The position numbers and the translations under genes were made by a program. The notes beneath the pieces were generated by a model, which was not told where the DNA came from, made no database searches, and saw only the letters and a program-made list of their open reading frames with translations. Shown here in pieces: positions 520 through 10,274 of a stretch of 64,000 nucleotides of DNA. Origin of the DNA: Perna viridis (taxonomy: Eukaryota). Each line of letters begins with the position of its first letter. The stretch's first letter is position 1. The DNA lies in assembly GCA_037379345.1 (NCBI GenBank), contig CM074511.1:58472862-58536861 (forward strand), written 5' to 3'.

Positions 520-3500
520 CAGTCCTCAGCAGCCTGTCTGATCCATTTCAAAACATCATCCATGTTTAAGGTGATTAGTGTCCTTTCAAGTTGTACATAT
601 GTTGCAAACATGTCTCCTATCTTTTCCCTTGCTGCTACTAACATCTAAAAATAATACTTGAAGCTTTTATATTAATTGGCAAAAACAGCTTTTTAAACAT
701 AAGGTAGATACAAATCATAGATAGTTTTCATTTCTAACATTAACATATGTTTTGTAATAAGTACGTGTAATTTTCCATGGCTTCTAAACCTAAAAGCGAG
801 ATGGGTACCTACCCCTAACAATTGATGTTCTTTGTTTGTTGTCAATGCATCATTGAAGATCTTGTCGTTTTCAGGCCTAGAGAGACCCATCTGTAGTCCT
901 ATTTCATTCATTGATCCATAGTTTCCAAATTTCTCTATTAATTCTACAAAGAACTGTTCTGATGCTGGAGTCAGTTGTTCTGTAACAGTAATAACAACTG
1001 CTTACAGTGTCTGTTTCATGCAGGTGTAAAATACAATTTGTTTTAAGTAATACTTTATTTCTAATCAAGCAATGTATGTTATATTGAATTACCAGAGCTA
1101 CCCCCAATGTGTGCCCTAACATTGTCCATATATAAAAAGTGGATTTAAACTAGATTGATGCTAGCGTATGAAGTAGAAACTGAAAAGTGATATCAATAGG
1201 AGCAGAAATTTTGATATAGTATCTACTGGATGATATTTCTAAAATGTGGGCTGGAATATGTTTTTCGCTGAAGATGCTGTCCAAATAGATTTCAGACAAA
1301 AATTCAGGACCAGAATTTTTTTTCCTTACACAAAATCAGGAAGTGTGCTTTTCTGTTTTAACTTACCTGTTTTTAAAGGTCGGTGAGATGGCCCTGTTAA
1401 CTTGTTTGCTGCCCATTTATAAAAACGGTCCTTGCTTTCAATGTTATTCTTAAGCCTTCAAATAAAGAGTTAATATTACAAACAATAAAGCTCGTCATAA
1501 ATGAGACAATCTGTATAGTGTAAATAAGTACTATCTTTGAAAAAAGATAGCCGACGCAGTAAAAATTTCTTCTTTTTATTTCTAAGTTTCTACATTTCGT
1601 TCAAGAAAATAACACATGGCACGCGATTATAAATTTTCGAAACTTTTTTTCGAACGCCACTAAATTATCAGTATTTGGCCAATCGGGAAACAGAATTGCG
1701 ATCAGGTGACTTGCGTTTCCTTAGAAGAACGTCCTTAAGGTCAAAGGGTAAAAAGCGAAAATATACCGACGGCGTCGGAAAAAAAAACATTAGTGCAGCT
1801 TTTATGTTAAATTTCATACTTTTACAAATGCTTCCACTACGTGTTTTTACATTGTAAGCACAGAAACTCCTTACCTATGCTACGGAATTAGTTTTAGTGA
1901 AAAGGTGCCCGGAGAAAGATAATTTTAAGACATTGCCTCCGTTCCCCTTTCTATGTTCAGATTCCACGTAAAAGCGGGAAACACTTTCCTTAATCAATGA
2001 TGCGTGACTCTTACCATATTTCTAGTTCATCATGTATTAATTGTACTAAATCTTCTCTTTCGATTCTGTGAAGGACAGATACAAGATCATTCACACCATA
2101 GTCCTCTCTGTGTTTACTGGTGTCCCTCCATAACATCATCACCTATACAACAGTGGTAAATATATATTAGTTAAATCGAGAAGAGGATTATGAGTAAAAG
2201 AGTTCTGGTTATCACGTAATACTGCCAGTTGCTTGTAATATTATCATACTAAATAAACCAAGTCGTTATTTTTATTCGGTTACGAACATAAGAAATATGC
2301 TTTAAAGTATCAAAGAGTTTGCCTTATATATACACGTATTCTTATTCATATTATAATAGTTCATGAGCAGCACATTCATCAATTCTTTTGCCGGAAAACA
2401 CTGATATTTTAAGCTCAAACGATGGATTTAGAGCCATACAACATGTTTACCTTAAATTTTTTATCTTGGTCGCTCAGTTTGGCATTGGTCCTGTATATTT
2501 CTACAGTGCGGTATGAAAGACCGAGAAGCACAGCAACTTTAGTCCATTCATCTCCCATACTTTTACACAACTGGCGTAGTAAGCTGTCTTTAGTAAAGCC
2601 TAAGTAAAAAAAGACAATAAGATTTATATACCCCGCGACATGAAGTAGCGAGTTAGTATTGGATAACCTAAGAAAAGTCCCCGGCAGTTTCCAGATGGTA
2701 ACATGAGAACGGATCAATGATTTTTTTTTTAAACTTTGCACAGCTGTTAAGTTGAAGTTTAAGAATGAGGCAAAATTGGAAAAATGAGGGGGCTGTTGTT
2801 CAACTTGTCTGCTAAAAATAAAACCATCGATCTGACAGTATAAATACACACAAGGATGCTTTCTCCATTTGAAAAGACCATTATCTGACCAAGGCATCAC
2901 TGGATTTTTCCTAAGAAATTTTTCGACAGAATGTTAAAAAAATGATCGAGGTTTTTGACAATGTTATCTGCCCCTGAAACGTTAATTAGTGTAGTTCAGT
3001 GAAATTATAACTGAATTTACCAAAATCATATGTAAAATCTTGTCTTTTTTCCTTGATTCTGATTGTACAAATAGTCAAATTTAACTTTCAAAATGGTGGG
3101 TTTTTCATACCATGTTTTACCCACTGCATGATTCTTACAGTTTTGTTTGTTTGTTGGGGTTTAACGTCCGAGCAGGAATATTTCAGCTATAAAGATTGAC
3201 ACTTAAGTACCAAAAAATACAGGTTAAGTAAAATTTGTAGCAAAATCTATAATTAAGTTTGAGGTCATTTTAATTATTTTGCCATCGCCCTTTTTCATAA
3301 TCACGTGGCGGAGTATCACATATAATGTTCCGTTATTGTCCTAGTTTATATAATTTGCTTCATCCTTTTCATACTGAATATTACATGTCAAAATCTGTAT
3401 CGCAAGCTGCATCAACCCAAGACTCCTATATCACAACAAGGGCGATACAGATTTTGACATGTCATGTTCATTATATCATATATTTTAAGCATGCTTCAAG

Positions 3501-9500: not shown

Positions 9501-10274
9501 AAAATACCATATCAGGTTCGTCTACAAACGAATAGCGTTTATGCTAAGTTAAGATGGGGTGAGTGTAACTAACCTTGTCTTTATGCCTGGGATTAGCACC
9601 TCTGGATAGCAGTATCCTTTGCATTGTGTAATTCCTTCTCTGACATGCTTTGAGTAGAGGTGTCATTCCGTCTTTCTAAAGATATGCATGTAATGTAAAC
9701 CAAAGTTTTACAAATTTAAAAATATCATACTAGTGAAATAATTATAGTTTATCAATATAGACAACTACACAAGCACCTTTTTTTTTTATATATATAAATG
9801 TTTTTTTTTCTTCAAATAAACATTTTTACCTGCATTTTTGCTAATGATGTCATTTTCTCACAACTATATGCATTTGTCCCAACATGTAATGGATTTGGCC
9901 GTGGTCTCGTCAGTTTTTGATTTCTTGTTTGTAACCTCTTCTTGTTGAATACAGGTATTCTACTACGTTAAAATGCCTACCTTATCACTGTAATTGACGT
10001 TGGCTCCTTGTAGTAGAATGCCTACCTTATCCCTGTACTTGACGTTGGCTCCTTGTAGTAGAATGCCTACCTTATCACTGTAGTTGACGTTGGCTCCTTG
10101 TAGTAGAATGCCTACCTTACCACTGTAGTTGACGTTGGCTCCTTGTAGTAGAATACCTACCTTATCCCTGTAGTTGACGTTGGCTCCTTGTAGTAGGAGC
10201 TTCTCGACATGTCCGGTCTTCCCTCTACAGACCGCAGTAAGAAGCTTCTCGTTCAAGCTCTGAATGTCATGCAT
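520..10274 (-). CDS. PIDD1/DTHD1-like protein: 4x ankyrin, ZU5, ZU5(HFS), UPA, death domain, death domain (multi-exon; 3' end probably outside the window, or stop at 507 if the last donor is unused)
   Basis: Phase-consistent GT-AG exons: 10274-10161, 9675-9574, 9322-9224, 8541-8443, 7957-7866, 7630-7276, 7002-6775, 5102-4798, 4572-4037, 2599-2451, 2142-2015, 1455-1367, 979-813, 644-520 (862 codons). The 99/102-bp phase-0 exons read as ankyrin repeats (DGMTPLLKAC, LGLSCLHYIA, SESTPLHYAA). ZU5-like segments end in VDHFSIYV. A UPA-like segment (LEFHPKREN) follows. Death-domain motifs: LLRQLCKSMGDEWTKVAVLLGLS...MMLWRD...DLVSVLHRIEREDL. Confidence 0.85.
3515..3614. repeat. Degenerate tgtgatataggg minisatellite
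   Basis: Repeated gatatagg motif. Confidence 0.7.
5455..5525. repeat. 34-bp direct repeat x2
   Basis: aatttatacgtcaatgaaaattttcaact occurs twice. Confidence 0.85.
8614..8697. repeat. 28-bp tandem repeat x3
   Basis: ctttgacattttccatggcattgtaacc-like units. Confidence 0.85.
9972..10196 (-). repeat. 45-bp tandem repeat x5 spanning the exon/intron junction of the first ankyrin exon
   Basis: Units start at 9972, 10017, 10062, 10107 and 10152; each encodes about VGILLQGANVNYSDK and carries AAG|GTAGG. Confidence 0.95.

What the first reader, a model, noticed from the sequence alone, without database searches (positions are those of the whole stretch)
520..10274. Ankyrin-PIDD-like scaffold: ANK4-ZU5-ZU5-UPA-DD-DD
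Seen: a phase-consistent 14-exon frame giving 4 ankyrin repeats, two ZU5-like segments, a UPA-like segment and two death domains. Established: the ZU5-ZU5-UPA-DD supramodule occurs in PIDD1 (N-terminal LRRs, one DD) and in canonical ankyrins (24 ANK repeats, one DD). Inference: this short-ANK, double-DD form fits neither and may be a lineage-specific PIDDosome-like death or immune platform, with ANKs replacing the LRR region.
Basis: partly seen in the sequence, partly recalled or inferred. Interest (0 to 1): 0.8.

Follow-up and report, generated by a model that had tools for sequence, protein, structure and literature searches.

The report
Mollusc mini-ankyrin with two death domains
This is an intact, expressed mussel gene for a short, ankyrin-like protein that carries a self-cleavage motif like that of the cell-death protein PIDD1 and two death domains; the family occurs across molluscs, has never been studied, and may take part in cell-death or immune signalling.

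Summary
On the minus strand, 14 phase-consistent GT-AG coding exons run from the ATG at 10274 to a splice donor at 520.

- **Transcripts:** contigs from four studies join exons 8 to 14 exactly as modelled. The UPA domain, death domain 1 (DD1), a linker exon and death domain 2 (DD2) are therefore in one mRNA.
- **The gene does not end at 520:** a 15th exon lies 1.3 kb left of the window. It adds a 480-residue low-complexity tail, giving about 1336 aa in total.
- **Domains seen by Pfam:** only the ankyrin (ANK) repeats, a weak UPA_2 hit and DD1.
- **Domains seen by fold and profile:** the ZU5-ZU5-UPA-DD core shows up only this way. An AlphaFold model of the Pecten homologue matches the ankyrin-B ZU5-ZU5-UPA-DD crystal structure 4D8O (E 1e-21). 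The model of the window's own UPA exon matches the same structure. The family profile aligns with canonical ankyrins over 511 columns (99.7%, E 3e-25).
- **DD2:** a divergent death domain (93.8% profile match to DD1).
- **HFS motif:** H-F-S sits at the ZU5-2/UPA junction and is conserved in the family. Canonical ankyrins have V-S-A there.
- **Distribution:** bivalves and gastropods, every member unnamed.

So this is a divergent "mini-ankyrin", not a PIDD1 orthologue. Its role as a self-cleaving death-domain platform is inferred, not shown. The scan noted a similar gene elsewhere in this genome (s1-774436).

The parts
10161..10274 (-). Exon 1: start codon (10274-10272) and ANK repeat 1. It ends at the first of five in-frame donors.
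   Evidence: Sequence. Pfam Ank E 1.6e-11. Mytilus orthologue residue 39 begins at exon 2, which fits use of the first donor.
9972..10196 (-). 45-bp x 5 tandem repeat that duplicates the end of exon 1 together with its splice donor.
   Evidence: Tandem Repeats Finder: 95% matches, score 408. Sequence. Which donor is used was not tested with reads.
9574..9675 (-). Exon 2: ANK repeat 2 (34 codons, phase 0).
   Evidence: Sequence. 83-86% identical to the Mytilus orthologues.
9224..9322 (-). Exon 3: ANK repeat 3 (33 codons).
   Evidence: Sequence. 76-79% identical to Mytilus.
8443..8541 (-). Exon 4: ANK repeat 4 (33 codons).
   Evidence: Pfam Ank E 1.8e-5. 93-97% identical to Mytilus.
7866..7957 (-). 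Exon 5: capping helices and linker after the ANK repeats; ends in phase 2.
   Evidence: Sequence. The homologue model has helices 141-165 here.
7276..7630 (-). Exon 6: most of ZU5-1.
   Evidence: 75-76% identical to Mytilus and 46% to Pecten residues 168-281. That part of the Pecten model is a beta-sandwich aligned to ankyrin ZU5. Family ZU5-1 profile against ankyrin: 63%, E 7e-5. No Pfam ZU5 hit.
6775..6981 (-). Exon 7: last strands of ZU5-1 (its end reads F-N, with no HFS) and first strands of ZU5-2.
   Evidence: Sequence. Family alignment. Collinear with homologues.
4798..5102 (-). Exon 8: rest of ZU5-2, ending with H-F-S (codons at 4808-4800).
   Evidence: Transcript contigs join 4798 to 4572. 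Family ZU5-2 profile against ankyrin ZU5C: 94.2%, E 1.2e-7. HFS is conserved in about 20 of 28 family members.
4037..4572 (-). Exon 9: the complete UPA domain.
   Evidence: Pfam UPA_2 E 0.005, below the cut-off. AlphaFold model of this exon: pLDDT 91.6. Foldseek top hits: ankyrin-B ZU5-ZU5-UPA-DD 4D8O at 1.9e-6, then UNC5b and the NLRP1 FIIND UPA. Ankyrin HMM E 2.8e-5, the best of 270 open stretches.
2451..2599 (-). Exon 10: first half of death domain 1.
   Evidence: Pfam Death positions 5-39, 15.6 bits. Junctions 4037/2599 and 2451/2142 are in the transcript contigs.
2015..2142 (-). Exon 11: second half of death domain 1.
   Evidence: Pfam Death positions 49-85, 20.6 bits, E 4.9e-4. The Mytilus orthologue's DD1 scores 34-35 bits, above the cut-off.
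1367..1455 (-). Exon 12: linker between the two death domains, with the conserved D-R-F-Y-x-W motif.
   Evidence: The only strong candidate with the required phases. Both of its junctions are in the transcript contigs. 64% identical to the Saccostrea homologue.
813..979 (-). Exon 13: first half of death domain 2 (divergent).
   Evidence: Transcript junctions. DD2 profile against DD1 profile: 93.8%, E 1.7e-7. Reciprocal HMM cross-hits. No Pfam hit on the exon itself.
520..644 (-). Exon 14: second half of death domain 2. It ends at a donor (…TG|GTTAGT) and splices to exon 15 outside the window (L004 6689-5246, minus strand).
   Evidence: Contigs stop matching at 515 with one mismatch, which fits the first bases of exon 15, and they carry 381-2139 further bases. 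The acceptor and phase fit. The Mytilus orthologues continue collinearly into that exon.

Best explanation
**Shown.** The locus is an intact, spliced and expressed gene of a mytilid mussel. It encodes a protein of about 1336 aa: four ankyrin repeats plus a cap, then ZU5, ZU5, UPA, a death domain, a short conserved linker, a second divergent death domain, and about 480 residues of Ser/Lys/Thr/Pro-rich disordered tail. It belongs to an uncharacterised family found across molluscs. The family's ZU5-ZU5-UPA-DD core is homologous to that of the canonical ankyrins. So it is best described as a divergent 'mini-ankyrin' with a shortened repeat array and an extra death domain. Unlike canonical ankyrins, it keeps an H-F-S triplet at the ZU5-2/UPA border. 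That is the position of the self-cleavage site in PIDD1, and the matching S-F-S site in NLRP1/CARD8 lies at the same ZU5/UPA junction.

**Inferred.** The protein is a cytosolic death-fold signalling scaffold rather than a membrane-skeleton linker.
- The ZU5-ZU5-UPA block holds the death domains in a closed supramodule.
- The chain cleaves itself between F and S, and the two halves stay together non-covalently.
- Loss or displacement of the ANK-ZU5-ZU5 half frees a UPA-DD-DD-tail fragment. A ligand bound by the ankyrin repeats, or degradation of that half, could cause this.
- The freed fragment oligomerises through UPA and nucleates a death-domain assembly that recruits a death-domain adaptor or kinase. 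The partner is unknown.
For: **Gene structure and expression.**
- Exon model from the sequence.
- Six junctions in transcript contigs of four studies.
- About 17 runs from seven further studies hold a share of the stretch's words close to the share that is exon.
- The 15th exon.

**Family.**
- Collinear homologues in Mytilus (about 63% identity), Pecten, Saccostrea, Sinanodonta, Tegillarca, Pinctada, Solemya, Haliotis and Patella.

**Fold.**
- Pecten homologue model: pLDDT 83.4.
- Foldseek top hits: ankyrin-B ZU5-ZU5-UPA-DD 4D8O at E 1.2e-21 over 571 columns, then ankyrin-B/G ZU5-ZU5-UPA, ankyrin-R ZU5A-ZU5B and UNC5b.
- The window's own UPA exon: pLDDT 91.6, same top hits plus the NLRP1 FIIND UPA.

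**Sequence profiles.**
- Family core against nine canonical ankyrins: 99.7%, E 2.9e-25, 511 collinear columns.
- The same order is seen against this genome's own canonical ankyrin exons.
- DD2 against DD1: 93.8%.

**HFS motif.**
- Present in the window at 4808-4800 and in about 20 of 28 family members. ZU5-1 ends without it. Canonical ankyrins have V-S-A there.

**From papers.**
- HFS and SF/S autoproteolysis in PIDD, Nup98, CARD8 and NLRP1 (PMC3210808).
- UPA promotes death-fold filament formation in NLRP1 and CARD8 (PMC11874512).
Against: - No experiment or expression-response data bear on function.
- An HFS triplet is necessary but not sufficient for cleavage. The other residues that matter in CARD8 were not examined.
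- Eight of 28 family members lack a clean HFS, so cleavage may not be essential to the family.
- The closest demonstrable relatives, the ankyrins, are cytoskeletal adaptors, not death-signalling proteins.
- For the window's own ZU5 exons there is no direct profile or Pfam hit. The assignment goes through 46-76% identical homologues.
- DD2 has no Pfam hit on the window's exons and no match to the ankyrin DD profile.
- No death-domain partner was identified.
Confidence: 0.55

Rival explanations
1. It is a structural mini-ankyrin. This would be a short adaptor that, like ANK1-3, links a membrane or organelle protein (bound by the ankyrin repeats) to spectrin (bound by ZU5-1). The death domains and tail would act only as intramolecular regulators, and the HFS motif would have no catalytic role.
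For: The only known family with demonstrable sequence and fold homology over the whole core is the ankyrins. The order ANK, ZU5-ZU5-UPA-DD, disordered tail is the ankyrin order. Eight of 28 members lack a clean HFS.
Against: ZU5-1, the spectrin-binding domain in ankyrins, is the least ankyrin-like part (63%, E 7e-5; no Pfam ZU5 hit). Four repeats are far fewer than the 24 that form the ankyrin membrane-binding solenoid. HFS and a second death domain are conserved from protobranch bivalves to gastropods and are absent from canonical ankyrins. This genome also keeps a separate canonical ankyrin.
Confidence: 0.25
2. It is the molluscan counterpart of PIDD1. After cleaving itself at HFS, its UPA-DD fragment would assemble with CRADD and caspase-2. 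The ankyrin repeats would stand in for PIDD1's leucine-rich repeats.
For: It has the same ZU5-ZU5-UPA-DD core and an HFS at the ZU5-2/UPA border. A 2024 survey found CRADD and caspase-2 in molluscs but no PIDD in any lophotrochozoan (PMC11463336). In this genome Pfam UPA_2 hits only the canonical ankyrin gene, so no conventional PIDD was seen.
Against: Only one of PIDD1's two HFS sites is present. There are no leucine-rich repeats. No PIDD1 sequence was available for comparison, so orthology is untested. No CRADD gene was located here and no binding test was run.
Confidence: 0.15
3. The model is an artefact. Either the exons belong to separate transcripts or the gene is a pseudogene.
For: Junctions E1-E7 were not seen directly in reads. 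Five alternative in-frame donors exist in exon 1.
Against: Single contigs from four studies span exon 8 to exon 14 and extend 1192-1443 nt upstream, enough for exons 1-7. All exons are open and in phase. Orthologues are collinear over every exon.
Confidence: 0.03

Closest known systems
Canonical ankyrins (ANK1/2/3; crystal structure of the ankyrin-B ZU5-ZU5-UPA-DD tandem, PDB 4D8O)
   Same: The domain order is the same: ankyrin repeats, ZU5, ZU5, UPA, death domain, disordered C-terminal region. The core is homologous by fold (Foldseek E 1.2e-21) and by profile (99.7%, E 2.9e-25, 511 columns).
   Different: It has 4-5 repeats instead of 24. Identity is only 13-17%. Pfam's ZU5 model does not see it. 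It has H-F-S where ankyrins have V-S-A at the ZU5-2/UPA border. It has a second death domain. This genome has a separate canonical ankyrin gene.
PIDD1
   Same: It has a ZU5-ZU5-UPA-DD core with an HFS triplet at the ZU5-2/UPA border, the position of PIDD1's second self-cleavage site (my knowledge of PIDD1; motif role from PMC3210808).
   Different: It has ankyrin repeats instead of leucine-rich repeats. There is no HFS after ZU5-1. It has two death domains and a long tail. Sequence kinship with PIDD1 could not be tested here.
FIIND of NLRP1 and CARD8
   Same: A ZU5-UPA unit has the cleavage motif exactly at the ZU5/UPA junction, followed by a death-fold domain. The window's UPA exon model matches the rat NLRP1 UPA (7CRV, E 2.6e-3).
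   Different: The effector is a pair of death domains, not a CARD. There are two ZU5 domains. The match to ankyrin UPA is stronger.
UNC5 receptors and UNC5CL
   Same: It has a ZU5-UPA-DD supramodule. UNC5b (3G5B) is among the fold hits. From my own knowledge, not checked here, UNC5CL also carries an HFS site.
   Different: UNC5 proteins have one ZU5, and the receptors have an extracellular part and a membrane span. None of that is present here.
ANKDD1A/B (ankyrin repeat and death domain proteins)
   Same: Ankyrin repeats and a death domain sit in one protein. This is also all that automatic annotation sees in this family.
   Different: From my own knowledge, ANKDD1 has no ZU5 or UPA domains between the repeats and the death domain. 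Here about 460 residues of ZU5-ZU5-UPA lie between them.

Membership tests
ZU5-ZU5-UPA-DD supramodule proteins | Two ZU5 beta-sandwiches, a UPA domain and a death domain, contiguous and in that order | tested here: met
   Foldseek on the homologue model: 4D8O at E 1.2e-21 over 571 columns. Profile-profile comparison against ankyrins: 99.7% over 511 columns. The window's exons are collinear with that homologue at 37-47% identity over the core exons 6-11. The window's UPA exon, folded alone, gives the same hits.
Canonical ankyrin (ANK1-3) | Membrane-binding domain of 24 ankyrin repeats | tested here: not met
   Four repeat exons plus a cap. The repeat region of the homologue model spans residues 1-158.
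Canonical ankyrin (ANK1-3) | ZU5-N that binds beta-spectrin | not testable with these tools
   ZU5-1 is the weakest match to ankyrin (63%, E 7e-5). Binding needs an experiment.
PIDD1 | N-terminal leucine-rich repeats | tested here: not met
   The N-terminus is made of ankyrin repeats (Pfam). No further coding exon upstream is needed by the orthologues.
PIDD1 | HFS self-cleavage motifs at the ends of both ZU5 domains | tested here: not met
   HFS is present only after ZU5-2 (window 4808-4800). ZU5-1 ends F-N in the window and F-[NCVI] across the family.
PIDD1 | Death domain that assembles with CRADD/RAIDD | not tested
   No CRADD gene was located by proximity of CARD and Death exons. No complex prediction was run.
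FIIND (NLRP1/CARD8) | A single ZU5-UPA with cleavage at the junction, followed by a CARD | tested here: not met
   The motif position is the same, but there are two ZU5 domains, and death domains rather than a CARD follow.
Death domain (Pfam PF00531), first copy | Match to the Death profile above the cut-off of 22.6 bits | tested here: met
   The two exon halves match profile positions 5-39 (15.6 bits) and 49-85 (20.6 bits). The Mytilus orthologues score 34-35 bits.
Death domain, second copy | Death-fold six-helix bundle recognisable by profile | tested here: inconclusive
   There is no Pfam hit on the window's exons and no match to the ankyrin DD profile. In favour: the family DD2 profile matches the DD1 profile at 93.8%, E 1.7e-7; HMM cross-hits are reciprocal and full-length; a Haliotis member has a weak Pfam Death hit (E 0.002) on DD2; and the region is a confident helical bundle in the model.

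The most novel reading that the evidence does not exclude
This mollusc-wide family could be the missing upstream platform of lophotrochozoan death-fold signalling. It would be a protein of ankyrin descent that convergently works like PIDD1 or the NLRP1/CARD8 FIIND. It would cleave itself at HFS. When its ankyrin-repeat half is engaged or degraded, it would release a UPA-DD-DD fragment that seeds a death-domain assembly, for example with CRADD and caspase-2. A 2024 survey could find no PIDD for that pair in any lophotrochozoan.
Probability: 0.2. Interest if true: 0.8.

Novelty: new variant of a known kind. Interest (0 to 1): 0.55.

Why it matters
ZU5-UPA-death-fold modules sit at the heart of several vertebrate cell-death and inflammasome switches: PIDD1, NLRP1, CARD8 and UNC5. 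A 2024 survey reported that molluscs have CRADD and caspase-2 but no detectable PIDD (PMC11463336). Here is a conserved and expressed molluscan protein that standard domain searches label only as 'ankyrin repeats plus a death domain'. By fold and profile it has the full ZU5-ZU5-UPA-DD core, a PIDD-type cleavage motif and a tandem of death domains.

If it self-cleaves and signals, it would give bivalve immunity and apoptosis research a concrete candidate platform. It would also show that an ankyrin-type scaffold was turned into a death-signalling device. If it does not, it is simply a divergent short ankyrin. The result also illustrates how much domain architecture Pfam misses in molluscs.

Tried and rejected
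- **Pfam on every exon and on 25 full-length family members.** No ZU5 hit anywhere. Pfam ZU5 searched over the whole genome gives 12 hits, none at this locus.
- **PDB sequence searches.** A 23-sequence profile of the UPA exon, and two ANK-free family members, found nothing even at E 10. The kinship is beyond plain sequence search.
- **Structural alignment (VIA-align) of the 922-residue model against all PDB representatives.** The list was filled by ankyrin-repeat proteins and said nothing about DD2.
- **ZU5-1 against ZU5-2 profile comparison.** Only weak (E 0.004, probability 8%).
- **Search for this species' own full-length protein in the protein collection.** Not found. I therefore had no referenceable spliced product. 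The Pecten and Mytilus proteins served as full-length proxies.
- **Search for a CRADD gene.** I looked for CARD and Death exons lying close together, and read five long CARD open frames. None was a CARD-DD protein. No complex prediction was sent.
- **Looking for a true PIDD in this genome.** Pfam UPA_2 hit only one locus, which turned out to be the canonical ankyrin gene.
- **Pseudogene or separate-transcript reading.** Rejected on the transcript contigs.
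Full report
**What is in the sequence**

The region is AT-rich animal DNA, about 34% G+C, with no N. Stop-free stretches on the minus strand between 10292 and 510 read as a chain of exons.

Reading the minus strand directly gives 14 coding exons with canonical GT-AG borders and consistent phases: E1 10274-10161 (ATG at 10274), E2 9675-9574, E3 9322-9224, E4 8541-8443, E5 7957-7866, E6 7630-7276, E7 6981-6775, E8 5102-4798, E9 4572-4037, E10 2599-2451, E11 2142-2015, E12 1455-1367, E13 979-813 and E14 644-520.

E12 was found by listing every AG..GT segment with the phases required between E11 and E13. 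One candidate stood out, with a GTAAGT donor.

**Transcript evidence**

About 17 public runs of one organism, from seven further studies, hold 22-27% of the sampled words of window 450-6449. That share is close to the share of the stretch that is exon. Three runs of an eighth study, presumably genomic, hold 82-90%.

I laid the contigs of four of these runs, each from a different study. In each run a single contig (3079, 3328 and 4159 nt; two overlapping contigs in the fourth run) joins 5102-4798, 4572-4036, 2598-2449, 2140-2014, 1454-1367, 979-813 and 644-515. All skipped parts are bounded by CT..AC on the plus strand, which is GT..AG on the minus strand. UPA, DD1, the linker exon and DD2 are therefore in one mRNA.

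The contigs extend 1192-1443 nt upstream of E8, compared with 1068 nt of coding sequence in E1-E7. They rest on orthologue alignments that break exactly at my exon borders.

**The gene continues beyond the window**

The contigs stop matching at 515 with one mismatch, and they carry 381 nt (three runs) or 2139 nt (one run) more. Position 520/519 is a donor (…TG|GTTAGT).

The window is G000:C1:58472862-58536861. In the left flank (L004) the Mytilus orthologues continue collinearly at L004 6688 and downward. An acceptor at L004 6691-6690 puts exon 15 at 6689. This completes a Trp codon and opens a 480-codon frame that ends at 5246.

The first bases of exon 15 explain the five extra matched letters and the single mismatch in the contigs. 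The tail is Ser/Lys/Thr/Pro-rich, contains TPTPKPK-like repeats and has no Pfam match. By exon arithmetic the protein is about 1336 aa.

Every search used single exons by reference, or full-length orthologues returned by the tools.

**Domains**

*Pfam on single exons.* It sees Ank in E1 (1.6e-11) and E4 (1.8e-5). It gives a sub-threshold UPA_2 hit in E9 (E 0.005). It matches the two halves of one Death domain in E10 (profile 5-39, 15.6 bits) and E11 (profile 49-85, 20.6 bits). It sees no ZU5, either here or in any of 25 full-length relatives. A whole-genome ZU5 search does not hit this locus.

*Family.* A search of 1.8 billion representative proteins with the UPA exon found 47 relatives. The full-length ones I looked up are all molluscan and all unnamed:
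- Bivalves: Pecten, Ylistrum, Mizuhopecten, Argopecten, Mytilus, Saccostrea, Crassostrea, Pinctada, Tegillarca, Sinanodonta, Potamilus and Solemya.
- Gastropods: Haliotis and Patella.

The closest are Mytilus trossulus (1288 aa) and M. coruscus (1240 aa) at about 63% identity. They are collinear with every exon, including the start of the tail. The host is therefore a mytilid mussel outside Mytilus itself.

*Fold.* An AlphaFold model of the Pecten homologue, built with a 28-sequence alignment, has mean pLDDT 83.4. Its best matches among solved structures are:
- the ankyrin-B ZU5-ZU5-UPA-DD tandem 4D8O (E 1.2e-21, 571 columns);
- ankyrin-B and ankyrin-G ZU5-ZU5-UPA in spectrin complexes;
- ankyrin-R ZU5A-ZU5B;
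- the UNC5b cytoplasmic domain.

Residues 1-158 superpose on 4-5-repeat ankyrin domains with Z about 25.

The window's own exon 9, folded alone, has pLDDT 91.6. It again hits 4D8O first (1.9e-6), then UNC5b and the UPA subdomain of rat NLRP1 FIIND.

*Sequence profiles against canonical ankyrins.* A later search returned canonical ankyrins from a shark, a carp and insects.
- The family's core (Pecten residues 165-722) aligns with their ZU5-ZU5-UPA-DD region as one collinear block of 511 columns: probability 99.7%, E 2.9e-25.
- Per domain: ZU5-1 63%, ZU5-2 94%, UPA 96%, DD1 95%.
- The same order appears against this genome's own canonical ankyrin exons.
- An ankyrin-derived HMM ranks the window's UPA and DD1 exons as the top three of 270 open stretches.

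*The second death domain.* Its profile matches the DD1 profile (93.8%, E 1.7e-7). HMMs of each domain cross-hit the other over nearly full length in several members. It is a confident helical bundle in the model. It has no Pfam hit in the window and no match to the ankyrin DD profile. I call it a divergent death domain with moderate-to-good confidence.

The UPA-DD-DD module also ends two giant gastropod proteins of 4289 and 4604 aa. Tegillarca has two extra canonical death domains inserted between DD1 and DD2.

**The cleavage motif**

Exon 8 ends …V-D-H-F-S, and Ile-Tyr-Val-Ala-Ser follows in exon 9. H-F-S at this ZU5-2/UPA border is kept in about 20 of 28 family members. The end of ZU5-1 has F followed by N, C, V or I and no His.

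In the profile alignment, canonical ankyrins have V-S-A at the same columns. HFS is the autoproteolytic triplet of PIDD and Nup98, and SF/S at the ZU5/UPA junction is that of CARD8 and NLRP1 (PMC3210808).

**Interpretation**

Its interpretation needs adjusting. The family is demonstrably related to ankyrins and shares their overall order, including a disordered tail. 'Mini-ankyrin' therefore describes its descent better than 'PIDD1 with ANK instead of LRR'.

It is not a canonical ankyrin:
- it has 4-5 repeats rather than 24;
- its ZU5-1 is highly divergent;
- it has an HFS motif;
- it has a second death domain;
- this genome has a separate canonical ankyrin gene at C4:2.77-2.81 Mb. That gene is the only place where Pfam UPA_2 hits.

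A 2024 survey states that no PIDD could be found in any lophotrochozoan although CRADD and caspase-2 are present in molluscs (PMC11463336). UPA is known to promote death-fold filament formation in NLRP1 and CARD8 (PMC11874512). These facts make a self-cleaving death-domain platform the most attractive mechanism. It is an inference. A purely structural adaptor role is a serious rival.

**Family size here and earlier notes**

Only two further UPA-exon paralogues were found in this genome, at C1:25.75 Mb and C11:11.17 Mb, with 31-33% identity. This is not a large lineage-specific expansion.

The scan's own notes list the HFS motif (s1-776392) and the donor repeat (s1-776393) on this window, and a similar '4 ANK + ZU5 + UPA-like + DD' gene elsewhere in this genome (s1-774436).

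**Verdict**

This is a real, intact, expressed gene with a confirmed unusual architecture. It belongs to an uncharacterised mollusc-wide family that is a new variant of the ankyrin/PIDD/UNC5 class of ZU5-UPA-death-domain proteins. Its function is unknown. The best guess is an autoprocessed death-fold signalling scaffold.

Noticed in passing
window 1-293: A roughly 295-bp repeat with at least 58 copies across the genome at 77-93% identity. Several copies lie in short tandem arrays about 330 bp apart. It is probably a SINE-like or satellite element.
   Followed up: no
window 9972-10196: A 45-bp unit is repeated five times (95% identical). It duplicates the last 15 codons of exon 1 together with the GTAGGT donor, giving five in-frame alternative donors. 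The Mytilus orthologues fit use of the first donor.
   Followed up: partly
window 3050-3249, 1650-1849, 1450-1649: Intron segments have summed contig depths of thousands to 20,000 in all four RNA-like runs, with many loose ends. They are presumably fragments of highly expressed repeats or transposons lying in introns 9 and 11.
   Followed up: no
window 2013-2015: If intron 11 is retained, the frame reads TGG then TAA. That would give a protein ending right after DD1, a single-DD isoform. No contig showed this.
   Followed up: partly
L005-L008 (G000:C4:2770001-2810000): This is the canonical ankyrin gene of this genome. It has many ANK-repeat exons, Pfam ZU5 at 78 bits, UPA_2 at 78 and 90 bits, and a Death exon. 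The ZU5 match contains three TGA stops, which I did not examine.
   Followed up: partly
G000:C2:41594431-41611113 and G000:C4:42540127-42651872: Two tandem pairs of loci have a canonical Pfam ZU5 followed within 4-7 kb by a Death exon. They look UNC5- or UNC5CL-like. Another scan note (s1-776416) mentions stand-alone ZU5-ZU5-UPA genes in this genome.
   Followed up: no
P0072 (Tegillarca granosa, 987 aa), P0010 (Haliotis, 4604 aa), P0025 (Patella, 4289 aa): The number of death domains varies within the family. Tegillarca has two extra canonical death domains between DD1 and DD2. Two giant gastropod proteins end with UPA and DD1; the Haliotis one also has a clear DD2.
   Followed up: partly
G000, whole genome: At least 92 CARD-profile matches and 49 Death-profile matches were found exon by exon. 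This suggests a large death-fold repertoire, as reported for other bivalves.
   Followed up: no
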